Assembly: GCF_001194135.2 (NCBI RefSeq)
Contig: NC_069008.1
Coordinates: 18,365,278-18,397,370, forward strand
Reading direction: 5' to 3'
Source: Octopus bimaculoides
Taxonomy: Eukaryota
DNA: 32,093 nt
Shown here: in pieces, positions 144 through 25,842 of the stretch
Position numbering within the stretch: the first letter of the stretch is position 1
How the letters are laid out: each line of letters opens with the position of its first letter
Translations under genes and position numbers: made by a program
The notes under the pieces: model-generated
What the model was told of the DNA's origin: nothing
What the model saw: the letters and a program-made list of their open reading frames with translations, nothing else
Databases searched by the model: none

Positions 144-802
<659 letters not shown>

Positions 803-879
803 GCCAGCTGGAGATGGTGTCTCCTGGGGCTAAATTACAGCAGCATTAGTCTTAAACCAGGACTACTGCCATGTTATGT

Positions 880-970
880 TGGCAAATAATCTTTACTACA
901 CTTGTGGACATGCTTATGAAATCAGGAAACAACACAACAGCCATGACTTTTGGAAACATCTTTTCCTTGA
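880..970 (+). mobile_element. Short 3' remnant of a CR1-clade LINE
   Basis: Translates TCGHAYEIRKQHNSHDFWKHLF, homologous within this window to ...YKVRKQHSSHDFQKHFF at ~21600-21655; matches the CR1 'TRGH..K....R..FF' C-terminal motif. Confidence 0.65.
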
Positions 971-1039
971 TCAGAATTGCCAAAGCAACGTTAAGGCAAG
1001 ACAAACATCTCAAGTCATGTGTGTGTGTGTGTGTATGCA

Positions 1040-9460: not shown

Positions 9461-9788
9461 CTCACAGAACACATGTGGACCACTCATTCTCTCCAGTAGT
9501 TTAATCTCACTCCCTAGCTGGGGCAACGTCTGCTGGTTCCAATTTATTCTCCAGCTTCTAAGACTAAAATTTCTGAAATGTCAATATTCTGTTTTCTTTC
9601 ATTTCTTTGGAAAATTGGAAAAAAATTTGTTTCAGAAATAAGGAACAGTTCTTCCATTTCTTGCATCTAATCATTTTCTTATTTACAATATCATTACTGT
9701 GAACAGCACCAAAAAAGCTTTTATTCGTGTGTGTGTGTGTGTGTGTGTGTGAGTTTTTCTCTGATGCAGGCTGTTTTTTCCTTTGCAG

Positions 9789-9896
9789 GTGGACCTTGAC
9801 CGCAATGACCGCCGACTTCAATTCCCCCGTGTCCGGACTGGCATCACAGACTACATGGAGGCAGTTTGGTTAATGAAAGAACAGGCACAGCAATGA
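9789..9896 (+). CDS. CFAP144: CFAP144/FAM183 terminal coding exon
   Basis: TTTTTTCCTTTGCAG acceptor; phase 0, compatible with the 5310 donor; reads VDLDRNDRRLQFPRVRTGITDYMEAVWLMKEQAQQ* (cf. FAM183A [23 protein letters not shown]); TGA followed by TAA. Confidence 0.88.
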   Translation: MDLDRNDRRLQFPRVRTGITDYMEAVWLMKEQAQQ

Positions 9897-10086: not shown

Positions 10087-10896
10087 TCTCAATTATCAAC
10101 TAAGAAATGGTGTTCAGTTTCATATTTTAGATACAGTTATGTGCATAAGAAGTTGATATATATATATATATATATATATATNNNNNNNNNNTATATATAT
10201 ATATATATATATATATATTCTTAGCTAGAATAGCGGCAAAATGAATTTCTTCACTCTTGCTCTGCTAAAATATTTGAGAAAAACTATATTAATGTGTCCA
10301 ACTTATTAAAATTCTATTTATTTATTTGTGCAGCTGAAGATGGTCTCTGAATCTAAATTGATGTAATGATTGCATTGTTCAATTAAATGGAGCCTCTTGA
10401 AACAGTCGTACTGCATTACTACTTGATACTCTCTGGCTTATTTTNNNNNNNNNNNNNNNNNNNNNNNNNNNNNNNNNNNNNNNNNNNNNNNNNNNNNNNN
10501 NNNNNNNNNNNNNNNNNNNNNNNNNNNNNNNNNNNNNNNNNNNNNNNNNNNNNNNNNNNNNNNNNNNNNNNNNNNNNNNNNNNNNNNNNNNNNNNNNNNN
10601 NNNNNNNNNNNNNNNNNNNNNNNNNNNNNNNNNNNNNNNNNNNNNNNNNNNNNNNNNNNNNNNNNNNNNNNNNNNNNNNNNNNNNNNNNNNNNNNNNNNN
10701 NNNNNNNNNNNNNNNNNNNNNNNNNNNNNNNNNNNNNNNNNNNNNNNNNNNNNNNNNNNNNNNNNNNNNNNNNNNNNNNNNNNNNNNNNNNNNNNNNNNN
10801 NNNNNNNNNNNNNNNNNNNNNNNNNNNNNNNNNNNNNNNNNNNNNNNNNNNNNNNNNNNNNNNNNNNNNNNNNNNNNNNNNNNNNNNNNNNNNNNN

Positions 10897-10967: not shown

Positions 10968-11168
10968 CGAAGGAGATTTAGCTGCTATTTTAAGCAGAAT
11001 CTCAATAAATTTAGAGTTAAAGGGAGATAATACTAATAATTGCTTGAATGGGTTACCTCCCTTGGACAAGAATAAATTGTCGATTTAGCTGCTATTTTAA
11101 GCAGAATTTCAATAGATTTAGAGATAATTCTAATAGTTGCTTGACTGGGTCACGTCCCTTTGACAAAG
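10968..11168 (+). repeat. ~107-bp tandem duplication at the left border of the GC-rich satellite
   Basis: GATTTAGCTGCTATTTTAAGCAGAAT...TTGCTTGA.TGGGT.AC.TCCCTT at 10975 and 11082. Confidence 0.85.
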
Positions 11169-14100
11169 ACGGACGCAAGGATGTTCGTTTCGTTCGGACG
11201 GACGGACGTGCATGAGAAAGAACGGACGCATGGACGTTCGTTTCGTACGGACGGACGTACGTGCATACGAAAAAACGGACGCAAGGACGTTCGCTTCGTT
11301 CGGACGGACGTACGTGCAAGCGATAGAACAGACGAGCAGAGGGAGGCCGAACGGACGCAGGTATGTTCGAATTCCGCTCGAAGGGGGCAGAGGAGGGCCG
11401 AACGGACGAACGTACGTTCGAATTCCGTTCGAACGATGCAGTGGGAGGCCGAACAGACGCACGTGCGTTCGAATATCGCTCGAACGGTGCAGAGGAAACC
11501 GAACGGACGCACGTACGTTCGAATTCTGCTCGAACGATGCAGTGGGAGGCCGAATGGACGCACGTACGTTCGAATATCGCTCAAAAGGTGCAGAGGAAAC
11601 CGAACGGACGAACGTACGTTCGAATTCCTCTCGAACGGCGAAGAGGGAGGCCGAACGGATGCACTCACGTTCGAATTCCACTCGAACGACGCAGAGGGAC
11701 GGCGAACGGACGCACGTACGTTTGAATTACGCTCGAACCGTGTGAGGGAGGACGAACCGACGCACGTACNNNNNNNNNNNNNNNNNNNNNNNNNNNNNNN
11801 NNNNNNNNNNNNNNNNNNNNNNNNNNNNNNNNNNNNNNNNNNNNNNNNNNNNNNNNNNNNNNNNNNNNNNNNNNNNNNNNNNNNNNNNNNNNNNNNNNNN
11901 NNNNNNNNNNNNNNNNNNNNNNNNNNNNNNNNNNNNNNNNNNNNNNNNNNNNNNNNNNNNNNNNNNNNNNNNNNNNNNNNNNNNNNNNNNNNNNNNNNNN
12001 NNNNNNNNNNNNNNNNNNNNNNNNNNNNNNNNNNNNNNNNNNNNNNNNNNNNNNNNNNNNNNNNNNNNNNNNNNNNNNNNNNNNNNNNNNNNNNNNNNNN
12101 NNNNNNNNNNNNNNNNNNNNNNNNNNNNNNNNNNNNNNNNNNNNNNNNNNNNNNNNNNNNNNNNNNNNNNNNNNNNNNNNNNNNNNNNNNNNNNNNNNNN
12201 NNNNNNNNNNNNNNNNNNNNNNNNNNNNNNNNNNNNNNNNNNNNNNNNNNNNNNNNNNNNNNNNNNNNNNNNNNNNNNNNNNNNNNNNNNNNNNNNNNNN
12301 NNNNNNNNNNNNNNNNNNNNNNNNNNNNNNNNNNNNNNNNNNNNNNNNNNNNNNNNNNNNNNNNNNNNNNNNNNNNNNNNNNNNNNNNNNNNNNNNNNNN
12401 NNNNNNNNNNNNNNNNNNNNNNNNNNNNNNNNNNNNNNNNNNNNNNNNNNNNNNNNNNNNNNNNNNNNNNNNNNNNNNNNNNNNNNNNNNNNNNNNNNNN
12501 NNNNNNNNNNNNNNNNNNNNNCGGACGAACGTACGTTCGAATTCCGCTGGAACGATGCAGTGGGAGGGCGAGCGGACGCACGTACGTTCGAATTCCGCTC
12601 GAACGGTGCAGAGGAATCTAAACTGACGCACGTACGTTTGAATTCCGCTAGAACGATGCAGGGGGAGGCGGAACAGACGCAAGTACGTCCGAACTATGCT
12701 CGATCGGTGCAGAGGCAGGTCGAACGGACACACGTCCGTTCGAATTTCCGCTCGAACGGTGCAGAGTGAGGACGAACGGACGAACGTACATCCGAATTCC
12801 GCTGGAACGGCGCAGAGGAGGGCCGAATGGACGAACGAACGTTCGAGTTCCACTCGAACGATGCAGTGGGAGGTCGAACGGACGTACGTACGTTCGAATA
12901 TCGATCGAACGGTGCAGAGGAACCCGAACGGACGAACGTATGTTTGAATTCCTCTCAAACGACGCAGAGGGAGGCTGAACGGAAGCACGTACGTTCGAAT
13001 TCAGCTTGAACGCTGCAGAGGGAGGCCGAACGGACGCACGTACGTTCGAATTCCGCTCGAACGGTGCAGCGGGAGGAAGAACGGAACCATGTACGTTCGA
13101 ATTCCGCTCGGACGGTGCAGAGGGAGAACGAACGGACGCACGTCCGTTCGAATTCCGCTGGAACAGTGTAGAGGGAGGCCGAACTGACGCACGTACGTTC
13201 GAATTCCGCTCGAACAGTGTAGAGGGAGGACAAACGGACGCACGTACGTNNNNNNNNNNNNNNNNNNNNNNNNNNNNNNNNNNNNNNNNNNNNNNNNNNN
13301 NNNNNNNNNNNNNNNNNNNNNNNNNNNNNNNNNNNNNNNNNNNNNNNNNNNNNNNNNNNNNNNNNNNNNNNNNNNNNNNNNNNNNNNNNNNNNNNNNNNN
13401 NNNNNNNNNNNNNNNNNNNNNNNNNNNNNNNNNNNNNNNNNNNNNNNNNNNNNNNNNNNNNNNNNNNNNNNNNNNNNNNNNNNNNNNNNNNNNNNNNNNN
13501 NNNNNNNNNNNNNNNNNNNNNNNNNNNNNNNNNNNNNNNNNNNNNNNNNNNNNNNNNNNNNNNNNNNNNNNNNNNNNNNNNNNNNNNNNNNNNNNNNNNN
13601 NNNNNNNNNNNNNNNNNNNNNNNNNNNNNNNNNNNNNNNNNNNNNNNNNNNNNNNNNNNNNNNNNNNNNNNNNNNNNNNNNNNNNNNNNNNNNNNNNNNN
13701 NNNNNNNNNNNNNNNNNNNNNNNNNNNNNNNNNNNNNNNNNNNNNNNNNNNNNNNNNNNNNNNNNNNNNNNNNNNNNNNNNNNNNNNNNNNNNNNNNNNN
13801 NNNNNNNNNNNNNNNNNNNNNNNNNNNNNNNNNNNNNNNNNNNNNNNNNNNNNNNNNNNNNNNNNNNNNNNNNNNNNNNNNNNNNNNNNNNNNNNNNNNN
13901 NNNNNNNNNNNNNNNNACGTTCAAATTACGCTCGAACGGTGCAGAGGGAGGCCGAACAGATGCAATTACTTTCGAATTCCGCTCGAACGATAAAAAGAGA
14001 GGCTAATCGGACCCACGTACGTTCAAATTCCGCTCGATGGATAAAGAGAGAGGCCGAACGGACCCACGTACGTTCAAATTACGCTCGAACGGTGCAGAGG

Positions 14101-16702
14101 GAGGCCGAGCGGCCTCTCGTACGTTCGAACTCCGCTTGATCGGTGCAGAGGGTGGCCGAGCGGCCGCTAGTACGTTCGAATTCGGCTTGATCGGTGCAGA
14201 GGGAGCCCGAACGGACGCACGTACTTTCGAATTCCGCTGGAACGGCGTAGAGGATTGCCGAATGGACGAACGAACGTTCGAGTTCCGCTCGAACGATGCA
14301 GTGGGAGGTCGAACGGACGTACGTACGTTCGAATATCGATCAAACGATGCGGAGGAACCCGAACGGGCGAACGTATGTTTGAATTCCTCTCAAACGGCGC
14401 AGAGGGAGGCTGAACTGAAGCACATACGTTCGAATTCAGCTTGAACGCTGCAGAGGGAGGCCGAACGGACGCACGTACGTTCGAATTCCGCTAGAACGGT
14501 GCAGCGGGAGGAAGAACGGACGCATGTACGTTCGAATTCCGCTCGGACGGTGCAGAGGGAGAACGAACGGACGCACGTCCGTTCGAATTCCGCTGGAACA
14601 GTGTAGAAGGAGGTCGAACGGACGAACGTACATTCGAATTCAGCCTGAACGGTGCAGTGGGAGGTCGAACGGACGCACATACGTTAGAATTCCGCTCAAA
14701 CTTTAAAGAGGGAGGCCGAACTGACGCACGTACGTTCGAATTCCGCTCGAACGGTGCAGAGGGAGGACAAACGGACGCACGTAGTTCGAATTTCGCTCGA
14801 ACGGTGTAGAGGGAGGTCGAACGGAGGCACATACGTTCGAATTCCGCTCGAACGGCGCAGATGGAGGCCGAACAGACGCAAGTTCGTTCGAATTCCTCTC
14901 GGATAGTGCAAAGGGAGAACGAACGAATTCCGCTGGAACGGTGCAGAGGGAGGCCGAAAAGATGCAATTACTTTCGAATTCGGCTCGAACTTTAAAGAGT
15001 GAGGCCGAACTGACGCACGTACGTTCGAATTCCACTCGAACGGTGCAGAGGGANNNNNNNNNNCGAACGGTGTAGAGGGAGGTCGAACGGAGGCACATAC
15101 GTTCGAATTCCGCTCGAACGGCGCAGATGGAGGCCGAACAGACGCAAGTTCGTTCGAATTCCTCTCGGATAGTGCAAAGGGAGAACGAACGAATTCCGCT
15201 GGAACGGTGCAGAGGGAGGCCGAAAAGATGCAATTACTTTCGAATTCGGCTCGAACTTTAAAGAGTGAGGCCGAACTGACGCACGTACGTTCGAATTCCA
15301 CTCGAACGGTGCAGAGGGAGGCCGAACGGACGCACGCACGTTCGAATTCCGCTCGAACGGCGCTGAGGAGGGCCAAATGGACGAACATACGTTCAAATTC
15401 CTCTCGAACGATGCAGTGGGAGGCCGAACGGACGCACGTACGTTCGAATATCGCTCGAACGGTGCAGAGGAAACCGAACGGACGAACGTACGTTCGAATT
15501 CCTCTCGAACGGCGCTGAGGGAGGTCGAATGGACGCACGTACGTTCGAAATCCGCTGGATCGGTGCTGAGGGAGGCCGAACGGAGGCACGTACGTTCGAA
15601 TTCCGCTCGAATGGTGTAGAGGGAGGTCGAACGGAGGCACGTACATTCGAATTCCGCTCGAACGGCGCAGATGGAGGCCGAACAGAGGCAAGTACGTTCG
15701 AATTCCGCTCCAACGGCGCAGAGGGAGGCCGAACGGACGCACGTACGTCCAAATATCGCTCGATCGGAACAGAGGGAGGCCAAACGTACGCACGTACGTT
15801 CGAATTTCGCTCGAACGGTCGAGAGTGAGGCCGAACGGACGCAAGTTCGTTCGAATTCCGTTCGAACGATAAAGAGAGAGGCGAAACGGACCCATGAACG
15901 TTCAAATCCAGGTCGATGGATAAAGAGAGAGGCCAAACGGACCCACGTACGTTCAAATTACGCTCGATGGGTAAAGAGAGAGGCCAATCGGACCCACGTA
16001 CGTTCATATCCCGGTCGATGGATAAAGAGAGAGGCCAAACGGACCCACGTACGTTCAAATTACGCTCGATGGGTAAAGAGAGAGGCCAATCGGACCCACG
16101 TAAATTCAAATTCCGCTCAATGGATAAAGAGAGAGGCCAATCGGACCCACGTACGTTCGAATTACGCTCGATCGATAAAGAGAGAGGCCAATCGGACCCA
16201 CGAACGTTCGAATTCCGCTCGATGGATAAAGAGAGAGGCCAAACGGACCCACGTACGTTCAAATTACGCTCGAACGATAAAGAGAGAGGCNNNNNNNNNN
16301 GGACCCACGTACGTTCGAATTACGCTCGATCGATAAAGAGAGAGGCCAATCGGACCCACGAACGTTCGAATTCCGCTCGATGGATAAAGAGAGAGGCCAA
16401 ACGGACCCACGTACGTTCAAATTACGCTCGAACGATAAAGAGAGAGGCCAATCGGACCCACGTACGTTCAATTCCCGCTCGATGGATAGAGAGAGAGGCC
16501 AATCGGACACACGTACGTTCAAATTACGCTCGATGGATAAAGAGAGAGGGCAAATGGACCCACGAACGTTCAAATTACGCTCGAACGATAAAGAGAGAGG
16601 CCAAACGGACCCACGTACATTCAAATTCCGCTCGATGGATAAAGAGAGAGGACAATCGGACCCACGTACGTTCAAATTCCGCTCGAACGATAAAGAGAGA
16701 GG
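11160..16702. repeat. CpG-rich satellite, 51-bp monomer (type A GAACGGACGCACGTACGTTCGAATTCCGCTCGAACGGTGCAGAGGGAGGCC; type B GGCCAAACGGACCCACGTACGTTCAAATTACGCTCGATGGATAAAGAGAGA), interrupted by gaps
   Basis: Directly visible tandem array. The monomer equals 17 codons, which explains the overlapping repetitive ORFs on both strands. Confidence 0.96.
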
Positions 16703-16834
16703 NNNNNNNNNNNNNNNNNNNNNNNNNNNNNNNNNNNNNNNNNNNNNNNNNNNNNNNNNNNNNNNNNNNNNNNNNNNNNNNNNNNNNNNNNNNNNNNNNN
16801 NNTATATATAGACACACACACACATACATTCTCA

Positions 16835-17160: not shown

Positions 17161-17350
17161 TTCCAATTAGGGTGTGTGTGTGTCTGTACTATATACGTAT
17201 ATCAACAGGAAATTGAAAATTTGTTGGTATACACACACACATATATATATCAACCCAAGAGCAGAAATTTTACAGTTTGCTTTTCCTTTGACTGGTATAC
17301 ACCAAGTACAAAATTTCTCTGTTGTAGAAGATACCACAACCGCCAACAAA

Positions 17351-17509
17351 ATGATTTCTGCTTCAAAACTACGCGATTATTTTGCCAGATTACACCTGAA
17401 ACTCAACATTCCTCTGATTTTGGTTGGTGTGATGTTTGTTATGATGACTGTAAATTTCTTGCATCAGACCTCACGTATATCAGAGTTAGAGAAAAGATCC
17501 ATTGCAACG
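17351..17509 (+). CDS. Exon 1 of a 'short-chain collagen C4-like'/spongin NC1-like gene: basic N-terminus, hydrophobic signal-anchor, KR site
   Basis: AAAATGA start; MISASKLRDYFARLHLKLNIPLILVGVMFVMMTVNFLHQTSRISELEKRSIAT; strong GTAAGA donor at 17510, phase 0, compatible with the downstream exons. Confidence 0.7.
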
Positions 17510-17699
17510 GTAAGATTATTTGATTTATACGCATTCTACGTACAATTACCAAAGGTGGGATAGGGTTTATATGATATGTGGACAAAATTATTCATTGATA
17601 AGATGTGTACTGAACATTAAGAACACTTAACAAATACGTTTGATTCGATATTGTGGAAGCAGAAATCACTATAATACATCTGTGGCAATCACAGTAGAT

Positions 17700-18216
17700 C
17701 AGGTGTCACCAAACTTTTTTCATGGCGAGCCAGATAACTCAGAGAATGACAAGCACAGACCACATAATCATTTTGTTTAATACAATACAATGAATACACA
17801 AAAAATAAAGACAATAAACATATTTATTTACCAAAAAGTTATCAAAGGTGATGTTAACAATAAAATAGTTACATCACACCCAGTGTGCATAAATATCAGA
17901 ATCTCATAAGAGTAGAAACGATTAGTGAGATTTGTGAAATTGGTGTTTAGCTTTTAACATATCATCAATATTTGCTTTGGAATTGCTGTATCCAACCAAG
18001 AGAATTGCTTTCAAATGTTCAGCAGTCAACCTCGTTCGATGTGCTGACTTCACAGAATTCCTTTTTGAAAAATGTTTGCTCACAGACATATGTTGTTCGA
18101 AAAACTGGTGTCATATCAGAGGCAAATGACCTCTCATTGCAGGTATTTACACAAAAGGTATAACGCGGTGCGAGCCGGATGAACTGACCTCGCAGGTCGT
18201 AGTTTGGTGATCCCTG
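17700..18216 (-). mobile_element. hAT (Charlie/GTF2IRD2-like) deletion derivative
   Basis: 16-bp TIRs CAGGTGTCACCAAACT / AGTTTGGTGATCCCTG (14/16); degenerate 8-bp TSD CAGTAGAT/CGATAGAT. Minus strand encodes transposase C-terminus FRTTYVCEQTF..KSAHRTRLTAEHLKAILL...HQFHKSH* (stop 17922-17924). Confidence 0.85.
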
Positions 18217-18329
18217 CGATAGATTGATGCATTTATGGATTACAAATACCAATAATCTATACACTTACTAGCAGTAACACCAAGAATAATGATTTTAAAC
18301 CCACACACGTACAATAATCTGTAGACTCG

Positions 18330-18600
18330 GCCATCTTCACTAACTCCACAAATGGTAATCTAGTTCTGAGGTTTTGTTTCGGAATTTCTCTGCTTGTATT
18401 ATTCCCAAGAACCTATTACTATCGGAATTGTTTCTGTTTTCAGTCCCTTCACAGTTCTTATCTCCATTTCCAGATAATTTTATTTGAATAATTTCTTCAG
18501 TGCTATGAGAGATATTGTATTGTCTTTTGAAAAACATATCCATTTCGGTACCAGTGATGATAATTATCATTGATCTCCATGTCTGCACTGATTAACACAC
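18330..18600 (-). mobile_element. Decayed R4/Dong-like RLE LINE fragment
   Basis: LEMEIRTVKGLKTETIPIVIGS motif; shares AAACAGAAACAATTCC with the copy at ~27795. Confidence 0.65.
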
Positions 18601-20217
18601 ACCACATTACACTAATCCCTCATCATATTGCAGTTCACCAATCATGGTTTATCATTTTAAGCTTACATCAATTCCTTAGTGCTGATGTTTTGCATTTATA
18701 ATAAATATATACAAATAATAAAAATAATGAAAAAAAATATATATATACAGTACTGTATTATTTCTACTTCACGAATTTTCACCTATCACAGTGGGGTTTG
18801 GAACGTAACACCTGCCAGAGTCGAGGTATTACTGTATTTCATAATGCTGCCATAATTTCCAGAGTGTAAAATAAAATGCCATTTTTTTTATACCTACACA
18901 TATATATACTCGTTGGCTAAGTCTGGCTAGAGACGACGTTGTCAGTTTTGTCTTCTTAAATCTCCACATAATCCTGCATTTAATGTAATCTGCTTCATTA
19001 CATTCATCCTACGTTACATTAAACTTTTAGTTTCAACTTCTAATACCATTATACAGTTTATCTATTGGTCATACTTTGCACATTGCCAACATACGGGGTT
19101 CCTCTTTGCTAGGCACAATTTTAGATGAGGTTTATAACTTTCTCCAATTTTTGTTTTTTGTCCCCTTTTCTCCTTGCGACTGTCCCTCACATCTCTTTTT
19201 TTTTTAATTGTTGGGCTCCTTGAAAATATATTTTGTTTGTGTTTTGTATTTATTTTTGTAATTAATTTCCATTATTCTATATAATATAGATTATGAACAT
19301 CTTACAATAGACTTTTGGCTGTATTAAATTCCCACTCCACTGTAATGATAAACATAACAGATCTGTGATAGGTCATGGCTGATGCATTCGTTATTTTTTC
19401 CCTTTAATTGTTGGAAATTCAGCAGAAATAACTTTAAAAAGATCATACTGCAAACACAGGGGGGGGGGGCTACAGTATTGATTTATAAGCCTTTAATACA
19501 CTTGGTAGTACATTATGGTTGCTTAAGGAACTGCGGCGTTCATACCAGCAATTAATATGTATGTACCAGTTGCCAGAAATGTGTTTATTATGTGAGATTG
19601 CTCTATCCAATTGTGGTTATTTAAGCAAAATGTTCTAAGATGGCTAATAGCTTGGATGTTGTGGTGAAGAAGGAGCAAGAATGCTTGCAATATGCATATA
19701 CACACTTAATTTTCTTTATTGGATCGCATTGTTTACATAGATGTATTCATATACGAATGCCGTCACTTTCAGTGCAGGCTCTAATTTATACAGAAAATCT
19801 TCAAAAATAACTTTAAAAAGTATTTTCTCCCCAGTTTAGTCTTGCTGGCCACATGGAGCAGCACCCTGTAACTCCTATAGTATGTGCAACCGAAACCCTT
19901 ATGGGACAACCTAGATGAGATGAGATTTAGTCTTGCTAGAATGTTCAGTGTTTTGCTGAGAAGATTAAAACTGATTAATAGATATATAGAGTATTGACAC
20001 CTATAATCCCATTTTTTGGCATCTAGCCTTGTCTTATGCACCGAGCAAAATAAGCACATGATTATGGAAGCAAGGGAAATGCTTATGGCATTTACCAGAG
20101 AAATGGTAAACGGTTTACAGTAGGAAAGAAATCACTTTAAACTTGCTTAAATAATATATGGGATGCCTTTATCTCTTCTTAGAAGCAGAAATGTTACCTA
20201 AGATTAATTATGACGAT

Positions 20218-20383
20218 AGGCACAGTAGGAGTGGCCGTGTGGTAAGAAGCTTGCTTACCAACCACATGGTTCCGGGTTCATTCCCATTGCATAGCACCAT
20301 GGGCAAGTGTCTTCTACTATAGCCTCGGGCCGACCAAAGCCTTGTGAGTGGATTTGGTAGACAGAAACGAAAAAAGCCCGGTG

Positions 20384-20418
<35 letters not shown>

Positions 20419-20604
20419 CTGTGTTTGTCCCCCCCCAACATTGCTTGACAACCGATGGTGGTGCGTTTATGTCCCTGTAACTTAGCAGTTCGGCAAAATA
20501 GACTGATAGAATAAGTTCTAGGCTTCCAAAGAATAAGTCAACTTTCTCGACTAAAGGCGGTGCTCCAGCATGGCCACAGTCAAATGACTCAAACAAGTAA
20601 AAGA
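20218..20604 (+). mobile_element. tRNA-derived SINE with internal (GT)n
   Basis: Pol III A box TGGCCGTGTGG (20232-20242) and B box GGTTCATTCCC (20275-20285); body resembles the high-copy octopus SINE as I recall it; A-rich tail. Confidence 0.85.
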
Positions 20605-21214
20605 GGATCTAATCAAAGATAAATACAGAGGTAGTATACAAAAAAAAAAAATTTACCATCTCATTGTTAGTTTTGCTTTATTTTGAAAAACAAAAATTTA
20701 TTTTATAGTTTATTTTTGTTTTCAATTACATGTACATGGGGCCCCAAAATATTTCAAGTGCTTAAGGTTTCTGTGAGTTTTAATCCAGCCCTGGTTTTAA
20801 GTATTAAACTAATTCTCATCAGAACTCTTTCCTGAACATTTTTCATTCGCCTATGTTGTTTGTTCTCAGCTGTAATTACTGCAACCCAAGTATTTGGGTG
20901 TCTGTATTGTAATAACTCGTAGTATCTCAGTTCGTTTGACCTATTATAATATTTGTTTTCTTCTTTCTCCTATCTTCAGTCTTGCCTTGGTACATTTCCA
21001 AATCCAAATTTCATATTAATTCCGGCAAATATTTTATCTACACATTTATGATGTACAAAACACTTTTAGAGGCCTTTTGTCCTTCCATATTATTTCTAGC
21101 ATTTGTATCCGAGTCCAATTTTGTTTATATAGAGAGTAAACATAAAAAGAAATGGCATATCGATAGATGGGACACTTTGAAACAAGAATGTGCTCAATCA
21201 GGTTTGAAATGGAA

Positions 21215-21770
21215 CTGAACTACAACACAAACAATTTAAAATTGTCAAGAAGGCCGAGGGTGTCTGGGCATCACTCAGCAGCTCTCCAGCTATCTTTTAA
21301 AGGCTGTATATGGTTATGGTGCAGCCACACTTGGAATTTGCATCACCTGTCTGGAACCCCTATCTTGCTCAGGACATTGACTTCCTGGAAACTGTTCGGA
21401 GACATGCAACCAAGCAAATGCCTTCCATCAGGCATCTCCCATACTCTAAACACCTTGCTTCTTCCCTGGGCATGGATACATTGAAGCTCTGATGTCTGGC
21501 AACTGAATTAGTAAACACCCACAAAATTATTAACCATCGCACCAACAACCACCTCAATCACCTTTTTGAGCTCCATGTGTCTAATACACATGTGGGCATG
21601 CTCTACAAAGTCAGAAAACAGCACAGCTCCCATGACTTTCAGAAACATTTCTTCACACTCAGAGTCGCTGAAGCATGGAACAAACTACCAGCATCAGTTG
21701 TTAGTTGCCAAGACATTGCTTCCTTTAAATCCTCCATGTTGCCTGAAATTCACCAACACAAAACCTGATA
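21215..21770 (+). mobile_element. 3' fragment of a CR1-clade LINE (post-RT C-terminus)
   Basis: LYMVMVQPHLEFASPVWNPYLAQDIDFLETVRRHATK...KHFFTLRVAEAWNKLP, the CR1 'VRPHLEYA..VW.P' and 'RV...WN.LP' motifs; frameshifts and stops. Confidence 0.85.
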
Positions 21771-21981
21771 TCCCCCCCCCACCCGCCACTCCATATGCAT
21801 GCACCCATGTATATCATGACTCATACACTGTTCACTTTCCTGACTTTTATACATAATTCTATGTACTGTACATGCACCTTTGATGAGTTGCAGTGCACGC
21901 ACACACACATATGCATGTATGTATGCATACACACACAACATGCATATCTGACATCAAAATACGTTTCCTATGTAATTTCAG

Positions 21982-22012
21982 ACTACGAGTATTCCACCTA
22001 CACCAAGAGCCG
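21982..22012 (+). CDS. 31-nt microexon (exon 2) of the NC1-like gene, encoding TTSIPPTPRA
   Basis: TTTCCTATGTAATTTCAG acceptor and consensus GTAAGT donor; phase 0 in and phase 1 out, exactly what bridges exon 1 (phase 0) and exon 3 (phase 1). Confidence 0.75.
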
Positions 22013-22139
22013 GTAAGTTTTGCATTTTAATGGCTATTGTATTCACAGCTGTCTTTATTTCTACACGTATTATAAACTGTTGCCTTCTCCCTTTCTCTCT
22101 CTCCCTGTTTATTCTTCATATTTTCTTTGCAGAGATGAA

Positions 22140-22600
22140 GGAAATGGCTATTTCATGTTTTCTCACTCTTCAAAGGGAAAGTAAACTTCCTCTGCGAATA
22201 CTGTTTGGCCACAACATTTTATGAGGTGTCGCTCTCCTCCTACTCGGTCCTGCCACATCCCATATCTTCCCTAAGCATTCTCTTAATTCCAGTCCCTTCT
22301 GGATCATAGTCATTTCATTCTTCTCTATATCCAACCTGGACTCTTTGAATGTTACTGCTTCCATTGAAACACCTGTCTCTTTCTCTATGGCACCACTCAT
22401 CTACACAGCCCTAACTCTTCCTTCCATGTCACTTACCACTTCACCTGTGCTACAAACAACGTTACATACTGCATATAGTACAAAAAAATCTGCGTGGTAG
22501 TATGCAGTGTCCGGTTGGAGATTGGCAGACTGTTTTGAAGAGAATCTTTCAAACATCTGACACAACTTCAAATAGTTTCTCCACATTTCTAATCTGCCCC
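22140..22600 (-). mobile_element. Highly decayed RTE-like LINE fragment
   Basis: RLDIEKNEMTMIQ..ELRECLG...RRR resembles the RTE post-RT 'RLE.NEM.M.RW...ELRERLG...RRLRW' segment; weak. Confidence 0.4.
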
Positions 22601-23174
22601 TACACACACACACAAATTCTCAATGGAACACTGCAGACATTATAACTTCAAAAAATGTAGCATACAGTGTCAGGTACTAGAGCAGAACATTTAGCCTTTA
22701 ATTGTTTCGCATTAAAACTTGCTTATATTTATAAAATATTCAGGTCATTTTGGAACTAAGCAGCTAGAAAACATTTACTGATGGCAACTGAGCCTCACCG
22801 CGCCATAATGCTCGAATTAATTCAGTATGAGTGCACAAAGCAAAGAGGATCCAATCAATGATAAAAACAGAATGGAGTACGTAAAGCAAGAATACAGACG
22901 CGTGTTTTCCAGAAATTCCAGCATACTGTCATGAGATGCTGTGTTTTGATTACTGCTTTCTCTGTAGCTCCTGTTGAGTGCAAACAACCAAGGTGTTATC
23001 TCCCAAAGACATGGCAAAAAAGCTTGGCGAATCACTGTCTTGTACTCCGTTGGCGTCACTTGGAGCTTAGTGTATTATTATGCACAAAGATAAATTCATT
23101 TTCTGGACGGGATGCAGGAGGAAAGAGTGAGAGAAAGTTATGGCGAAAGAGTCAGCAAAAGTTTGTTATTACCT

Positions 23175-23251
23175 TTTGCTAGAGCCGCCCATCTCAGATT
23201 CGAAGCCGCGATCCCGAGTCCGCTGCTCTAGCCCATAGGCCATGTAACTCC
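23175..23251 (-). mobile_element. tRNA-like SINE head
   Basis: Minus strand GGAGTTACATGGCCTATGGGCTAGAGCAGCGGACTC...GCTTCGAATCT: A box (23232-23242) and B box (23196-23206); no cloverleaf 3' arm. Confidence 0.6.
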
Positions 23252-24688
23252 ACATAATTACCTCTATTAAGAATAAAAAATAACTCAAAATATTTTTGGC
23301 ACTTGAAAAAATATTCATTTTTTAAAATTATTAATTAGAAATTTAAAGATAGGTTATAAAAATTAATAGCAGTACATAATTAGTTATTAGAATAATACAA
23401 AAATTAGTTATATATTACAGTAAAATTTGCTTGAGTTATTACCAAGTCTTCACATTTTTAGTCTTGACCCAATGCCTATTTTTGGCATAATGAATTTGCT
23501 TACCAAATATACTATTCTACTTTGCTAAAAACTTTAGCTATATTGCTACTCCTGACTCTTGCTTTTTTAGTATTCTAGTGTGTAAATATTTTAACAAAAT
23601 GATGGTACCTTTTTTTAATTATAACGTTACTTTGTAAATTAAAATCAAATAATTTTTAATATTCAGATTTTATCTTTAGCTGCGATATTTTAAGTAAAAA
23701 TTTTCTTGTTCTGTACTTTACCAAATGTAATAACTTGCCCTGTACATTTCCAGGTTTATAATCTTAAGAATAGTATTTCCTTTGCTTGCATGTAATCCAT
23801 GTTTTTTCCAGGCTATTATACCATTATGCTAATTAATAATGTGTCAAATGTGTTAATTAGTGGTGGGTGGTGTTGATAATTTTTTCCTGACCTCAAAGAC
23901 GCCGGTGACAGATATTAGAAGACCCCTTATATTCATAAAAAAAGTATAGAACTATATTATCACCCTCAAATTTGAAAAACAAATACGCATAACATTTTCC
24001 TTTTAAAACTTCATTGCATGAGATTGATACCATGAAATTCCTTGAATTGTGTTCTATCATTTAAGCTTAAATAAAATATAGTTTGTTTTTTAAAAAAAAA
24101 AAGTTAATTATACTTAAATCTAATTTTTTGCCTTATATTTTCTTGCATGATATTTTACCTCACAATTTTTAAATACAATTTTTTGGTTGCATGGGAACAA
24201 AACTATGAAATCTTCCAGGCTTTCTTCTATCATTGTAGCTAAGATAAATATATTTTGCTTTATCTCCAATTACTCCCACCACCAACCATGCTGTAAGCCT
24301 TATTACACATTATTTTCTCAACTAATTCATTACTACATATTCTCATGTAACTGCATAGGTTCACTTTCTGTTTCTTATTCTACAGCCACACAAACAACCC
24401 AATATCAACCCTTCCACTTCTGCAACATTTCAACAGTTCGCTTCACCGTTGCCGTCTTCCATTGCAGCTCCTTTCTGAAATGTATCCATTTACATAAATA
24501 TCTCCATTACACCTACATTGATTCAACTGTGAACTGTACGATTTTCCAAGAGAGGTTAGGGCCTGGAATCCTCCATACGGACTCACGACATGTTGCTTAG
24601 TCAAATTAGCCCATCATTTACTCCACAAATGTTTTGTTGTCAATGCTGCACTTCTCCACATCAGATGTTTCACCTATACCAATTTAAT

Positions 24689-24716
24689 CCCGAGCAACGT
24701 CGGGTATCTCTACTAC
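24689..24716 (+). mobile_element. Helitron 3' terminus
   Basis: Hairpin CCCGA-GCAACG-TCGGG followed 8 nt later by CTAC|T (degenerate CTAG|T), the canonical Helitron 3' signature. Confidence 0.7.
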
Positions 24717-24747
24717 TCTATATATAAACCACATATTTCTCTTACAG

Positions 24748-24825
24748 TTGTTCAGTCTGGTGCCATATACACACATTGGGGAAAACAAAATTGCACTTCT
24801 AGAAGATCTATCCAAGTCTATTCAG
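24748..24825 (+). CDS. Exon 3 of the NC1-like gene (start of the conserved domain)
   Basis: TTTCTCTTACAG acceptor, GTAAGC donor; phase 1-1; VQSGAIYTHWGKQNCTSRRSIQVYS(G) matches the family 'G.vY.rWG...C......vY.G' motif. Confidence 0.9.
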
Positions 24826-25226
24826 GTAAGCATATATAATGCTCCAACCCAACATTCGTTATTTGTGTCTCGAGAAGTTCCACACTACAACACAACACAC
24901 TTCTAGATTACTAAACGTTACAAATAGTTTCCCAGAAATAAAACTTGAAGCATGGATTTTACTCAAGATACTATTTTTTTAAAACAACTTTTGATTCGTC
25001 TTCTGAGAAGAAATAAGTGAAAAGTATAATTAATTAACTCTTATTTAATTCACTAGAACCCGATATTGGTTTGTTAACGATAATTGATGAATGTTAATTA
25101 GATTAGAATGCTACATTGGAACAACTGTTCTCCATTGTACTCATTTATTTGATTCATTAGATATTTCAATTTGATTTATAGATTTCAAAAACTAACACTC
25201 AAATCATTTCATATATATGTTGACAG

Positions 25227-25729
25227 GAGTTGCAGCTGGAGCGCATTACACACACAGTGGAAGTGGAAGTAGCTATTTGTGTCTACCAATGAAACCTCAA
25301 TGGGGTAATTACACAAACACTTGTGAAACCGCTGGCGCTATATACGGTGTCGAATACGAACTATCACAATATTCGAAAAGTCCGAAATTTGGAATGTTTG
25401 CACCTAAACCATACGCTTTGCATGATCAGGATGTCCCTTGTGCAGTCTGTGAGACTAAAAGACCTGCTTCAGTTATGATGATTCCAGCTCGAAAAGAATG
25501 TGTTGGTAGATGGCAAAAAGAGTATTCAGGTTATTTGATGAGCGAATATATAAAGCATGCAGGTAGAACTGAATATATATGTGTCGACAAAGAAGCTGAA
25601 GCTAATACCAAAGGATACGAAAATCTGAATGGTGCTCTATTATACCACGTACAAGCTATCGTTGGTTCATTGCCAAGTCCTCCATACGAGAACAATAGAG
25701 AGTTAACATGTGTTGTGTGTAGTAAATAG
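25227..25729 (+). CDS. Exon 4 (terminal) of the 'short-chain collagen C4-like'/spongin NC1-like gene
   Basis: TGACAG acceptor completes GGA; intact 166 codons with GAHYTHSGSGSSYLCLP, YGVEYE, DVPCAVC, MIPARKEC, EYSGYLM, EYICVD, GALLYHV, LP.PPY, ELTCVVCSK*; AATAAA at 25811. Confidence 0.92.
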
Positions 25730-25842
25730 TCAGGTTTATTTCTTCCTGAAATTTATACTAAATATTGAGACATATAATGAAATGAATGATTTTTGTTGAA
25801 CATTTACATTAATAAATAACAATTTAATATGTGGGTTTGGGG

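What the first reader, a model, noticed from the sequence alone, without database searches (positions are those of the whole stretch)
17351..25729. Collagen-less, membrane-anchored spongin/collagen-IV-NC1-like protein assembled from four exons
Seen: four exons with canonical splice sites and compatible phases (0, 1, 1) join into a 256-aa ORF: basic N-terminus, ~20-aa hydrophobic segment (residues 18-37), KR, Thr/Pro-rich stalk, then an intact domain. Established: this domain resembles the C-terminal NC1 of sponge short-chain collagens (spongin), related to collagen IV NC1, which trimerises collagen chains; invertebrate homologues are mostly annotated only as 'short-chain collagen C4-like'. Inference: with no Gly-X-Y exon visible, this is a type II anchored, stand-alone NC1-like oligomer, more like a lectin/C1q/TNF-style surface or secreted factor than a structural collagen. 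Only the last exon appears intact in the ORF track.
Basis: partly seen in the sequence, partly recalled or inferred. Interest (0 to 1): 0.7.

Follow-up and report, generated by a model that had tools for sequence, protein, structure and literature searches.

The report
Octopus collagen-less spongin-like secreted protein gene
This is a real, already annotated four-exon octopus gene for a small secretory-pathway protein that keeps only the globular end domain of an ancient collagen family, and its nearest studied relatives are the cuttlefish "sex pheromone" precursors.

Summary
Exons 17351-17509, 21982-22012, 24748-24825 and 25227-25729 (+) have AG/GT sites and phases 0, 1, 1. They join into a 256-aa ORF identical to Octopus bimaculoides XP_014777155.1 (LOC106874075).

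The C-terminal ~190 aa is the domain of the spongin / "short-chain collagen C4-like" family. That family has about 4,900 cluster representatives at 50% identity. The domain is an internal duplication. It is only remotely related to collagen IV NC1: Foldseek's top 29 hits are all NC1, hhalign gives E = 1e-4, and Pfam C4 does not match.

The window has no Gly-X-Y exon and the gene has no assembly gap. Lacking collagen is normal here, since about 85% of 260 relatives lack Gly-X-Y.

These are the Sepia officinalis oviduct-gland "sex pheromone" precursors SPα/α'/β (38-41% identity over nearly full length). They share the N-terminal hydrophobic segment and a dibasic site just after it. That site is reported as cleaved in Sepia SPβ.

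The protein is therefore most likely released as a soluble factor rather than kept as a surface anchor. It evolves fast (dN/dS about 0.5-0.7). Oligomeric state and function were not tested. It is a new member of a known kind, of moderate interest.

The parts
17351..17509 (+). Exon 1 (CDS residues 1-53, phase 0 donor). It encodes a polar, basic N-region (1-17), a hydrophobic segment (18-37, nt 17402-17461), and a juxtamembrane helix with the conserved HQTSRISELEKR motif.
   Evidence: tblastn with the O. sinensis, O. vulgaris and L002 homologues hits 17351-17503. AF2 predicts a helix over residues 4-51. Conservation is shown.
17486..17497 (+). Codons L46-E47-K48-R49, the conserved dibasic site directly after the hydrophobic segment. 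It is the inferred convertase release site (cleavage between R49 and S50).
   Evidence: It aligns with LEKK of Sepia SPβ, LEKR/LERR/LEKK of other cephalopod paralogues, and LEIR of SPα. The Sepia β1 peptide AEENKIQIQ, reported among the MALDI-TOF products, starts right after LEKK. Cleavage in the octopus protein is inferred, not shown.
21982..22012 (+). Exon 2 (31 nt, residues 54-63 plus 1 nt): the Thr/Pro-rich linker TTSIPPTPRA. It occupies the position where collagen-bearing relatives carry their Gly-X-Y region.
   Evidence: P0001 residues 54-63. Alignment A2 places the Gly-X-Y blocks of P0039, P0085, P0089 and P0024 in this gap. AF2 pLDDT is low here, 63.
24748..24825 (+). Exon 3 (78 nt, phase 1-1, residues 64-89): the first two beta strands of the N-lobe. 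It carries invariant Y71, W74, G75, C79 and Y88 and the sequon N78-C-T.
   Evidence: Homologues align to 24747-24827.
25227..25729 (+). Exon 4 (503 nt including TAG, residues 90-256): the rest of the N-lobe (to residue 158, nt 25432) and the whole C-lobe (residues 159-256, nt 25433-25726). It contains Cys 108, 122, 161, 164, 181, 208, 251 and 254 and the sequon N117-Y-T.
   Evidence: ORF 25217-25729. All homologues align from 25226. AF2 of the domain alone gives pLDDT 91.8 and pTM 0.87. The two halves match by hhalign at 97.3% probability, E = 1.8e-11.
25811..25816 (+). AATAAA, the candidate polyadenylation signal, 82 nt after the stop codon.
   Evidence: The consensus is present; use of the signal was not shown.
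17510..21981 (+). Intron 1 (4,472 nt). No homologous or Gly-X-Y exon and no assembly gap.
22013..24747 (+). Intron 2 (2,735 nt). No homologous or Gly-X-Y exon and no assembly gap.
24826..25226 (+). Intron 3 (401 nt), 92% identical to the O. sinensis intron.

Best explanation
The locus is Octopus bimaculoides LOC106874075, a four-exon gene for a 256-aa collagen-less member of the spongin short-chain-collagen-related ('short-chain collagen C4-like') family. It belongs to the cephalopod group of that family, which also contains the Sepia officinalis oviduct-gland 'sex pheromone' precursors.

Shown here:
- The gene model is correct.
- The protein has an N-terminal polar region followed by a 20-aa hydrophobic segment.
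- A conserved LEKR site follows that segment.
- A short Thr/Pro linker takes the place of the collagen helix.
- The C-terminal ~190-aa beta domain consists of two homologous lobes. Its 8 conserved cysteines line up with 8 of the 12 cysteines of collagen IV NC1.

Inferred mechanism:
1. The hydrophobic segment targets the chain to the ER with the C-terminal domain in the lumen. It acts as a type II signal anchor or as an unusually long signal peptide.
2. The domain folds with four long-range disulfides (two per lobe) and is N-glycosylated at N78 and N117.
3. A dibasic-specific proprotein convertase cuts after K48-R49. This is the position used in Sepia SPβ.
4. A ~23-kDa soluble globular protein (residues 50-256) is released and acts outside the cell as a signalling, recognition or secretion-coat factor, not as a structural collagen.

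Fast sequence evolution fits a reproductive, communication or defence role. The actual ligand, oligomeric state and tissue are unknown.
For: Gene model.

Family: E 1e-40 to 1e-50 to named short-chain collagen C4-like proteins from molluscs, annelids, brachiopods, echinoderms, cnidarians and a sponge. A profile search finds 4,920 representatives at 50% identity with E<=1e-3.

Sepia link: P0001 against SPα' is 41% identical over 241 aa (E = 1e-59). Against SPβ it is 38% over 253 aa (E = 3e-53).

Sepia proteins (PMC3484142): transcripts were found only in the oviduct gland and make up 47.8% of ESTs. Peptides β1, β2 and β4 were detected by MS. β2 and α3 were myotropic on penis and gill.

Shared N-terminal architecture and the aligned LE[KR][KR] site.

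Domain structure: AF2 gives pLDDT 91.8 and pTM 0.87. Internal duplication: hhalign 97.3%, E = 1.8e-11.

Collagen IV relation: the top 29 Foldseek PDB hits are all collagen IV NC1, with best E = 4.4e-4 and probability 0.98. hhalign against 7 NC1 sequences gives E = 1.1e-4 over 175 colinear columns. The literature agrees (PMC5395295).

No collagen.

Internal Sepia dibasic sites are mostly not conserved in the octopus protein, which favours release of the intact domain.

Fast evolution: omega 0.68 overall and 0.54 in the domain, and exon identity (87%) is about equal to intron identity (85-92%).
Against: - No expression or junction-read data for this gene could be examined.
- Signal anchor versus cleavable signal peptide cannot be decided without a dedicated predictor or an experiment.
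- LEKR lacks the P4 Arg of the furin consensus. Cleavage is transferred from Sepia SPβ by alignment only.
- The NJ tree does not resolve orthology to the Sepia genes (the cephalopod clade has 14% bootstrap).
- The collagen IV relation is weak by every single measure: Pfam C4 has no hit in any of 88 members, hmmsearch against PDB gives E about 1, Foldseek TM-scores are only 0.22-0.28, and the hhalign probability is 56%.
- Near-neutral divergence could also mean weak functional constraint.
Confidence: 0.6

Rival explanations
1. The protein is a stable type II single-pass membrane protein that displays a stand-alone NC1-like oligomer on the cell surface, acting as an adhesion or recognition receptor or a membrane-bound ligand, without obligatory release.
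For: - The N-region is long (17 aa) with a net positive charge.
- The hydrophobic stretch is 20 aa, with no small-x-small cleavage motif after it.
- AF2 predicts one continuous helix over residues 4-51.
- The length and pattern of the N-region are conserved among cephalopod paralogues, which a disposable signal peptide would not need.
- Anchor-like N-termini also occur in sponge, annelid and hemichordate family members.
Against: - A basic cleavage motif right after the hydrophobic segment is conserved.
- MS evidence indicates use of that position in Sepia SPβ. The Sepia homologues were recovered as processed products from the gland, and activity was reported from egg-conditioning medium as unpublished data.
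- A paralogue peptide was found in O. vulgaris ink.
- Most family members have ordinary short signal peptides.
Confidence: 0.22
2. The protein is a prohormone-like multi-peptide precursor, as proposed for Sepia SPα and SPβ. It would be cut at several dibasic sites (KR48-49, RR82-83, KR167-168, RK178-179) into small Cys-containing peptides that act as waterborne pheromones.
For: The homology to SPα' and SPβ is full-length. Sepia β2 was confirmed by MS/MS, and β2 and α3 were bioactive at 1e-8 to 1e-9 M. P0001 has four dibasic sites. RR/KR at 82-83 is conserved in the three Octopus copies.
Against: - Most Sepia internal sites are not conserved in P0001: CLP-RR becomes CLPMK, SE-KR becomes SEYIK, VD-KR becomes VDKE, and N-KR becomes HDQD.
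- Both Gly-dibasic amidation-type sites are altered: WGRKK becomes WGKQ and IPGRK becomes IPARK.
- The sites lie inside a confidently predicted compact fold. Its disulfides, mapped by analogy to collagen IV, would hold the fragments together.
- W-G-[RK] and M-I-P-G are family-wide structural motifs, also present in collagen-bearing members.
Confidence: 0.12
3. The protein is a secreted structural or matrix component, for example of the egg coat, mucus, ink or another secretion. It would self-assemble through NC1-like contacts, continuing the matrix role of spongins without the triple helix.
For: - Family history: spongins are extracellular matrix proteins, and NC1 directs assembly in collagen IV (PMC5395295).
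- The Sepia homologues make up about 48% of ESTs in the gland that secretes the inner egg envelope, an abundance typical of structural secretions.
- A paralogue peptide was found in O. vulgaris ink.
- Family members are up-regulated in the sea-anemone pedal disc, an adhesive tissue.
Against: - No assembly data exist.
- The HSQ motif is absent from the octopus sequence. The sulfilimine Met/Lys pair and the domain-swap hairpin of collagen IV NC1 were not examined here; PMC5395295 reports from modelling that spongins lack the domain-swap region.
- There is no long coiled coil in this protein.
- The high dN/dS is unusual for a structural protein.
Confidence: 0.2
4. The gene is an annotation artefact or a decaying gene. 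The four pieces would not be joined in vivo, or the gene would no longer be functional.
For: Sequence divergence from O. sinensis is near neutral. There is an odd ninth cysteine (C122). A family-conserved cysteine pair has been lost.
Against: - The open frame is intact, with consensus splice sites.
- The same 256-aa product is held by NCBI and by EukProt.
- The four-exon structure and the 256-aa length are conserved in O. sinensis.
- All 8 core cysteines and about 40 invariant family positions are kept.
- Domain omega of 0.54 is below 1.
- A transcript-length contig of a homologue has the same architecture.
Confidence: 0.04

Closest known systems
Sepia officinalis sex pheromone precursors SPα, SPα' and SPβ (AFH01336-AFH01338; Enault et al. 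2012, PMC3484142)
   Same: The size matches (248-252 aa against 256 aa). Identity is 38-41% over nearly the full length. The order of parts is the same: polar N-region, about 20 hydrophobic residues, an LE[KR/IR][KR] site, a linker, and the two-lobed Cys-rich domain ending in CxxC. Neither has Gly-X-Y.
   Different: The Sepia proteins keep the CGSLPC cysteine pair and add extra C-terminal cysteines. They carry more internal dibasic and Gly-dibasic sites, which the octopus protein mostly lacks. Orthology is unresolved. Expression and activity of the octopus gene are unknown. The Sepia authors listed these proteins as 'unknown' by BLAST and did not relate them to spongins or NC1.
Spongin short-chain collagens / SSCR family (founding member Ephydatia muelleri 'short-chain collagen C4', CAS4_EPHMU; Aouacheria et al. 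2006, cited)
   Same: The C-terminal domain is homologous (E 1e-40 to 1e-50 to family members) and sits at the extreme C-terminus. The core cysteines and motifs are conserved (YxRWG, YLCLP, PCAVC, GWxxEYxGYLMS, CVD, TCVVC). There is no Pfam C4 hit, as reported for bona fide spongins.
   Different: There is no collagen triple helix. The spongin-specific Cys pair is lost (CGSLPC becomes VGSLPS) in the Octopus clade only. The N-terminus is anchor-like rather than a short signal peptide. 'C4' in the name is the sponge cDNA clone name taken over from CAS4_EPHMU. It does not mean collagen IV.
Collagen IV NC1 domain (Pfam C4, PF01413; PDB 1LI1, 1M3D, 5NAX, 8TYS)
   Same: Both have two tandem homologous subdomains. 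The profile alignment is colinear and end to end, and 8 cysteines match, including both CxVC motifs and the C-P-x-G-W...G-Y segment. NC1 is the only fold found by Foldseek at E<0.1.
   Different: The domain has about 190 residues rather than about 229, and 8 cysteines rather than 12. It has no HSQ motif and no Pfam match. TM-scores are 0.22-0.28. There is no attached triple helix or 7S region. Hexamer formation and the sulfilimine cross-link residues were not tested.
Type II membrane proteins released by proprotein convertases (for example the TNF-family ligands EDA and APRIL, and the transmembrane collagens XIII/XXIII/XXV, MACITs, PMC4678570)
   Same: This is an analogy of architecture only: a short cytosolic N-terminus, a single hydrophobic segment, a basic cleavage site near the membrane, a stalk, and a C-terminal globular domain. 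The properties of those families are recalled from established knowledge and were not tested here.
   Different: The globular fold is unrelated: there were no TNF or C1q hits in Foldseek. The site is KR rather than RxK/RR. There is no collagen. Cleavage and trimerisation are unproven.
Ctenophore stand-alone NC1 protein (Fidler et al. 2017, PMC5395295)
   Same: It is an NC1-type domain encoded without a collagen helix.
   Different: The ctenophore protein is a true collagen IV-type NC1 and was reported only in Ctenophora. The octopus protein belongs to the spongin branch, which the same paper did not detect in ctenophores.

Membership tests
Spongin short-chain-collagen-related (SSCR, 'short-chain collagen C4-like') family | C-terminal ~185-aa Cys-rich domain homologous to the family domain | tested here: met
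   phmmer E 1e-40 to 1e-50 and 40-50% identity to many proteins named short-chain collagen C4(-like). About 40 invariant or near-invariant positions are kept. The profile finds 4,920 representatives.
Spongin short-chain-collagen-related (SSCR, 'short-chain collagen C4-like') family | Short Gly-X-Y collagenous region N-terminal to the domain (literature definition, PMC5395295) | tested here: not met
   No Gly-X-Y in the protein or in any frame of the window, and no gaps in the introns. However, only 38 of 260 close relatives have it, so the databases already hold mostly collagen-less members.
Spongin short-chain-collagen-related (SSCR, 'short-chain collagen C4-like') family | Ten conserved cysteines (seven shared with collagen IV plus three spongin-specific, PMC5395295) | tested here: inconclusive
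   Eight of ten are kept. The pair in CGSLPCPPY is replaced by VGSLPSPPY in the Octopus clade only. There is one extra non-conserved Cys122.
Spongin short-chain-collagen-related (SSCR, 'short-chain collagen C4-like') family | Direct similarity to the founding sponge sequence (Ephydatia CAS4_EPHMU) | not tested
   That sequence was not retrieved. The evidence is indirect: NCBI and UniRef names derived from it, and a Sycon ciliatum (sponge) homologue at E = 2e-41.
Cephalopod 'sex pheromone precursor' group (Sepia SPα/α'/β) | Full-length homology with the shared N-terminal hydrophobic segment and the following basic site | tested here: met
   BLASTP E = 1e-59 and 3e-53. MSA A4 aligns LEKR with LEKK of SPβ.
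Cephalopod 'sex pheromone precursor' group (Sepia SPα/α'/β) | Internal dibasic and Gly-dibasic processing sites that yield the α3- and β2-type amidated peptides | tested here: not met
   WGRKK becomes WGKQ and IPGRK becomes IPARK. Most other Sepia sites are absent. The O. sinensis and O. vulgaris copies do keep WGKR and IPGRK.
Cephalopod 'sex pheromone precursor' group (Sepia SPα/α'/β) | Female accessory-gland (oviduct gland) expression and secretion | not testable with these tools
   No expression data are available for LOC106874075. No paper in the library names it.
Cephalopod 'sex pheromone precursor' group (Sepia SPα/α'/β) | Orthology to the Sepia genes | tested here: inconclusive
   In the NJ tree the query clade has 100% bootstrap, but the cephalopod-wide clade has only 14%.
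Collagen IV NC1 (Pfam C4, PF01413) | Match to the Pfam C4 model | tested here: not met
   No hit at E<=10 for the protein and none at E<=1 in any of 88 family members. The same was reported for sponge spongins (PMC12749355).
Collagen IV NC1 (Pfam C4, PF01413) | Two tandem homologous subdomains | tested here: met
   hhalign of the N-half against the C-half of the family alignment: probability 97.3%, E = 1.8e-11, 77 columns.
Collagen IV NC1 (Pfam C4, PF01413) | Same fold as solved NC1 structures | tested here: inconclusive
   The top 29 Foldseek hits are all NC1 (E 4.4e-4 to 0.2, probability up to 0.98). TM-scores are 0.22-0.28 and rmsd is about 18 Å. Profile-profile comparison gives probability 56% and E = 1.1e-4.
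Collagen IV NC1 (Pfam C4, PF01413) | Twelve cysteines, HSQ motifs, and attachment to a long triple helix | tested here: not met
   Eight matching cysteines, no HSQ, no Gly-X-Y.
Collagen IV NC1 (Pfam C4, PF01413) | Trimer and hexamer assembly | not testable with these tools
   Only monomer prediction is offered.
C1q / TNF-like globular-head proteins | Ten-strand jelly-roll C1q/TNF fold | tested here: not met
   No C1q, TNF or collagen VIII/X NC1 structure appears among the Foldseek hits at E<=10. There is no Pfam C1q hit.
Type II signal-anchor membrane proteins | Uncleaved N-terminal hydrophobic segment of about 20 residues with positive charges on the N-side | tested here: inconclusive
   The sequence features fit: a 17-aa N-region with net positive charge, a 20-aa hydrophobic stretch, and no small-x-small site. 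No dedicated predictor or experiment was available. The Sepia homologues were predicted by their authors to have cleaved signal peptides of 29 and 34 aa.

The most novel reading that the evidence does not exclude
In coleoid cephalopods, a collagen-IV-type NC1 module inherited through the spongin family lost its triple helix and acquired a signal anchor with a convertase release site. It became a fast-evolving family of secreted chemical signals, to which the cuttlefish 'sex pheromones' belong, and LOC106874075 is an octopod member that acts in reproduction or chemical communication. This would make an ancient matrix-assembly domain the scaffold of a pheromone family. It would also reinterpret the Sepia 'peptide precursors' as folded NC1-like proteins.
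Probability: 0.25. Interest if true: 0.6.

Novelty: new member of a known kind. Interest (0 to 1): 0.38.

Why it matters
The gene itself is ordinary. It is an annotated member of a very large invertebrate family in which collagen-less forms dominate.

Two points have wider value. First, the cuttlefish sex pheromone precursors, which their authors described as having no database match, turn out to be spongin/NC1-like domain proteins. I found no paper in the searchable library that makes this link. It gives the large, functionally unstudied "short-chain collagen C4-like" family its first experimentally studied collagen-less relatives. It also suggests re-examining whether the Sepia products act as peptides or as a folded domain.

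Second, cephalopod members share a signal-anchor-plus-dibasic-site N-terminus. This is a simple and testable release mechanism.

Tried and rejected
- Pfam scan of the protein (E<=10) and of 88 relatives (E<=1) gave no C4 or any other domain hit except Collagen in 15 relatives.
- phmmer and hmmsearch against PDB sequences gave only noise and a marginal Viking NC1 hit at E about 1.
- Foldseek with the full-length model gave poor TM-scores. Repeating it with a domain-only model did not raise them, so the low TM-score is not caused by the N-terminal helix.
- A first ungapped codon comparison with O. sinensis was wrong, because two indels shift the register. It was replaced by a protein-guided codon alignment.
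- The NJ phylogeny could not resolve relations among the cephalopod paralogue groups or orthology to the Sepia genes.
- The search for hidden paralogues or collagen exons in the window was negative.
- Pfam on eight other window ORFs found nothing.
- Literature searches for the locus names, for octopus oviducal-gland pheromones, and for a published link between sex pheromones and short-chain collagen found nothing. The last search was swamped by the Bacillus phage SPβ.
- Aouacheria et al. 2006 is not held in the library.
- CTHRC1 was considered as a relative. It was set aside because published analyses place its C-terminal domain nearer the C1q / collagen VIII-X fold, and no such structure appeared in the Foldseek hits here.
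- Tegillarca P0300, which combines this domain with C1q, looks like a merged gene model rather than support for a C1q link.

Full report
**1. Observation**

The exons are 17351-17509, 21982-22012, 24748-24825 and 25227-25729 on the + strand. Each internal boundary has an AG acceptor preceded by a pyrimidine-rich tract and a GTAAG donor. The lengths are 159, 31, 78 and 503 nt, which gives intron phases 0, 1 and 1. The joined sequence is 771 nt, or 256 codons plus TAG.

The product is 100% identical over its whole length to XP_014777155.1, "uncharacterized protein LOC106874075 [Octopus bimaculoides]" (A0A0L8GXK3_OCTBM). The same sequence is also held by EukProt. The gene is called over exactly this 8,379-nt span on chromosome CM046628.1 of GCA_001194135.2.

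The O. sinensis counterpart (LOC115210429, 78% identity) has the same four exons, of 159/28/78/506 nt, with introns of 2.9, 14.2 and 0.4 kb.

A 1,104-nt Logan contig (L002) carries an uninterrupted 283-aa homologue (45% identity). It has the same order of parts: hydrophobic N-terminus, LEKRS, linker, domain. Its 90% cluster recurs on about 40 contigs of 1.0-1.2 kb, as expected of an mRNA. This is cross-species evidence that an exon-1-type N-terminus is joined directly to the domain.

No frame of the window encodes a Gly-X-Y run, apart from a low-complexity G run at 2294-2338. There is no second copy of the domain in the window. No assembly gap lies inside the gene.

**2. What the domain is**

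The protein matches hundreds of invertebrate proteins named "short-chain collagen C4(-like)". They come from molluscs, the annelid Owenia, Lingula, echinoderms, a hemichordate, amphioxus, cnidarians and the sponge Sycon. E-values are 1e-40 to 1e-50 and identity is 40-50% over the C-terminal ~190 residues.

The name comes from Swiss-Prot CAS4_EPHMU, a cDNA clone called C4 of the freshwater sponge Ephydatia. It is the spongin short-chain-collagen family of Exposito 1991 and Aouacheria 2006, as cited in PMC5395295 and PMC12549020.

A profile of 88 members finds 4,920 cluster representatives at 50% identity with E<=1e-3, and 1,405 with E<=1e-30.

Pfam has no model for this domain. The protein has no hit at E<=10, and none of the 88 relatives hits C4 (PF01413). 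Fifteen of them hit the Collagen repeat. An independent paper reports the same for bona fide sponge spongins (PMC12749355).

**3. Relation to collagen IV NC1**

The relation is real but remote. No single measure is strong.

- The domain is an internal duplication. The N-half (residues 66-158) and C-half (159-256) of the family alignment match at hhalign probability 97.3%, E = 1.8e-11. Collagen IV NC1 has the same two-subdomain plan.
- AlphaFold2 with the family alignment gives a confident all-beta model (domain alone: pLDDT 91.8, pTM 0.87).
- Foldseek against the PDB returns collagen IV NC1 chains as all 29 top hits (best E = 4.4e-4, probability 0.98). Nothing else scores below E = 0.1. However, TM-scores are only 0.22-0.28.
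- I compared the family profile with a profile of seven NC1 sequences. Their letters were taken from the output, which also verified my recalled human α1 sequence as 100% identical to the α1(IV) NC1 copy in the PDB fusion chain 6MPX_A (the same query scores E = 1e-159 over the whole of 1LI1_A). The comparison gives a colinear, end-to-end alignment of 175 columns at E = 1.1e-4 and probability 56%.
- In that alignment the eight conserved cysteines of the octopus protein fall on eight of the twelve NC1 cysteines. This includes both C-x-V-C motifs and the C-P-x-G-W...G-Y-S/L-x-M segment. That segment is also the only stretch picked up by hmmsearch against Viking NC1, at E about 1.4.
- The HSQ motif is absent.

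Fidler et al. reached the same conclusion for spongins: shared cysteines, no HSQ, and no domain-swap region by modelling.

By analogy with the solved NC1 disulfides (established knowledge), the predicted pairs are 79-164, 108-161, 181-254 and 208-251. I could not check these on coordinates.

**4. What is and is not special about this member**

Lack of collagen is not special. Among 260 proteins returned by the two searches, only 38 have five or more Gly-X-Y triplets. Among those of 450 aa or fewer, the figure is 35 of 215.

In collagen-bearing members the Gly-X-Y block sits exactly where the octopus protein has its 10-residue exon-2 linker.

Two features are specific:

- The otherwise nearly invariant pair in C-G-S-L-P-C-P-P-Y is replaced by V-G-S-L-P-S-P-P-Y. 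Among the 260 proteins, this occurs only in the Octopus clade P0001-P0005. Both cysteines are lost together, as expected for a local disulfide.
- The N-terminus is anchor-like: a 17-residue polar, net-positive N-region, then 20 uncharged hydrophobic residues, with no small-x-small site after them. Most family members have short signal-peptide-like N-termini. A minority have long anchor-like segments, including Sycon, Owenia and Glandiceps members, some of which carry collagen.

**5. The key relatives**

A second search, with the L002 protein as query, showed two things. Cephalopods hold a whole set of paralogues: at least four in O. bimaculoides, and more in O. sinensis, O. vulgaris and Argonauta. 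The Sepia officinalis "alpha", "alpha-prime" and "beta sex pheromone" precursors (AFH01336-8) are also members.

The octopus protein is 41% identical to SPα' over 241 residues (E = 1e-59) and 38% identical to SPβ over 253 residues (E = 3e-53).

Enault et al. 2012 (PMC3484142) found these transcripts as 47.8% of ESTs from female accessory sex glands. RT-PCR detected them only in the oviduct gland. The authors classed them as "unknown" by BLAST, predicted signal peptides of 29 and 34 residues, and proposed processing at dibasic sites. MS detected peptides β1, β2 (confirmed by MS/MS) and β4, and truncated α3. Synthetic β2 and α3 contracted penis and/or gill at 1e-8 to 1e-9 M.

No paper in the searchable library contains both "sex pheromone" and "short-chain collagen", so this family link appears not to have been made there.

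**6. How the protein most likely works**

In the alignment of 17 cephalopod proteins, all share the polar N-region and the hydrophobic segment of about 20 residues. In most, a helical H-Q-x-S-R-I-x-x-L-E-[KR]-[KR]-S motif follows; the two Sepia sequences lack the H-Q-x-S-R part and keep only L-E-[KR/IR]-[KR]. Ten of the 17 are dibasic at exactly the column of octopus K48-R49. The "MEEKS" subgroup has KK or KR about 12 residues later.

The LEKK of Sepia SPβ aligns with octopus LEKR. The β1 peptide AEENKIQIQ, reported among the MALDI-TOF products, begins immediately after LEKK. This indicates that this position is cut in vivo in a homologue.

I therefore infer the following sequence of events:

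1. The hydrophobic segment inserts the chain with the C-terminus in the lumen.
2. The domain folds and is glycosylated (sequons at N78 and N117).
3. A dibasic-specific convertase cuts after R49.
4. A soluble ~22.8-kDa protein of residues 50-256 is released.

Whether the hydrophobic segment is first removed by signal peptidase or acts as an anchor until convertase cleavage cannot be decided here. In either case the end product is extracellular and soluble.

The internal Sepia cleavage sites are mostly absent from the octopus protein. The two Gly-dibasic sites that generate the bioactive amidated Sepia peptides read WGKQ and IPARK in O. bimaculoides. They read WGKR and IPGRK in O. sinensis and O. 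vulgaris. W-G-[RK] and M-I-P-G are also family-wide structural motifs. I therefore favour release of the intact folded domain over a multi-peptide precursor.

**7. Evolutionary rate**

I used a protein-guided codon alignment with the O. sinensis copy. It gives dS = 0.20, dN = 0.13 and omega = 0.68 overall. In the domain omega is 0.54. In residues 1-63 it is 1.33, based on few sites.

Exon nucleotide identity is 87.4% in exon 1 and 86.5% in exon 4. That is no higher than in the adjoining introns, which are 85.7-92.3% identical. The core residues are kept, but the gene evolves close to the neutral rate. This fits a reproductive, communication or defence protein. It is equally compatible with relaxed constraint or with paralogue gene conversion, and I could not separate these.

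**8.

The anatomy and the family assignment are right. [quoted passage not shown] is reasonable.

"Membrane-anchored" is probably only a transient state. "C1q/TNF-style" is an analogy of architecture with no fold support. "Oligomer" is untested. The collagen-less state is the rule in this family, not an exception. The interest score of 0.7 is too high for the gene as such.

**9. Novelty**

The gene is annotated, the family has been known since 1991 and 2006, and the Sepia proteins have been known since 2012. This is a new member of a known kind.

The added value is the link between the Sepia pheromone precursors and the spongin/NC1 fold, and the shared signal-anchor-plus-dibasic-site N-terminus of cephalopod members.

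**10. Limits**

- I had no expression data, no signal-peptide predictor, no multimer modelling and no access to model coordinates.
- Aouacheria 2006 could not be read.
- The species of L002 is unknown.
- Orthology to the Sepia genes is unresolved.

Noticed in passing
window 5721-9345 and 11161-16702: There are two long tandem-repeat (satellite) arrays upstream of the gene, with periods of about 50 nt and about 51 nt (and higher-order 102, 153 and 430 nt units). They are broken by assembly gaps at 10445-10896, 11770-12521, 13250-13916 and 16703-16802. The second array ends about 650 nt before the start codon. The many long 'ORFs' listed there are repeat artefacts.
   Followed up: partly
window about 7351-9896 (+); L001 1-2546: The upstream neighbour on the same strand is a FAM183/CFAP144-like gene (Pfam PF14886, 133-aa product). 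Its called range ends near window position 9896 and overlaps the 50-nt satellite region.
   Followed up: no
P0336, P0371, P0365 (Sepia officinalis AFH01336-AFH01338): The cuttlefish 'sex pheromone' precursors SPα, SPα' and SPβ are collagen-less members of the spongin / short-chain collagen C4-like family. Their authors described them as without database matches. No paper in the searchable library holds both terms.
   Followed up: yes
window exons against L006 (O. sinensis CM016862.1, 39364773-39403090): The coding exons are as diverged as the flanking introns, or more so (86.5-87.4% in exons 1 and 4 against 85.7-92.3%), with omega 0.54-0.68. The cause was not resolved: relaxed constraint, diversifying selection or gene conversion.
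   Followed up: partly
P0002 (O. vulgaris, 419 aa); window 17294-17350: The O. vulgaris 419-aa protein is a fused model of two tandem paralogues. It reads through the equivalent of the 5' leader just upstream of the ATG, and both copies omit the 78-nt exon 3. Exon 3 is symmetric (phase 1-1), so skipping it keeps the reading frame but removes invariant Y71, W74, G75 and C79.
   Followed up: partly
window 25321-25323 (codon C122): O. bimaculoides has a ninth, unpaired cysteine (C122, in NTCET) that is absent from the O. sinensis and O. vulgaris copies and from the rest of the family.
   Followed up: no
P0268, P0170, P0276 (O. bimaculoides); P0265-P0290 (O. sinensis, O. vulgaris, Argonauta hians): Octopods carry several further paralogues, all collagen-less with the same anchor-like N-terminus and with the CGSLPC pair kept. 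Many lie on the same large contigs, so tandem clusters are likely. A peptide of one O. vulgaris paralogue was reported in the ink proteome (PMC10142993).
   Followed up: partly
P0300 (Tegillarca granosa, 457 aa); P0121 and P0122 (3,949 and 3,827 aa): Some database proteins combine this domain with a C1q domain, or contain 6-9 copies of it. P0300 reads as domain, then C1q, then a partial domain, and looks like merged neighbouring genes. The giant proteins were not examined.
   Followed up: partly
P0039, P0084 (Owenia), P0085 (Glandiceps), P0048 (Sycon): Some family members from other phyla have long anchor-like hydrophobic N-termini. Several combine a coiled coil, a furin-type RxKR site and a Gly-X-Y region before the domain. 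These would be transmembrane spongin-like collagens. I found no description of them in the searched literature.
   Followed up: partly
window 566-1130, 1969-2379, 21900-21945: (CA)n, (TA)n and (TATG)n-type microsatellites are frequent, including one inside intron 1 just upstream of exon 2. The window has 36.6% G+C.
   Followed up: no
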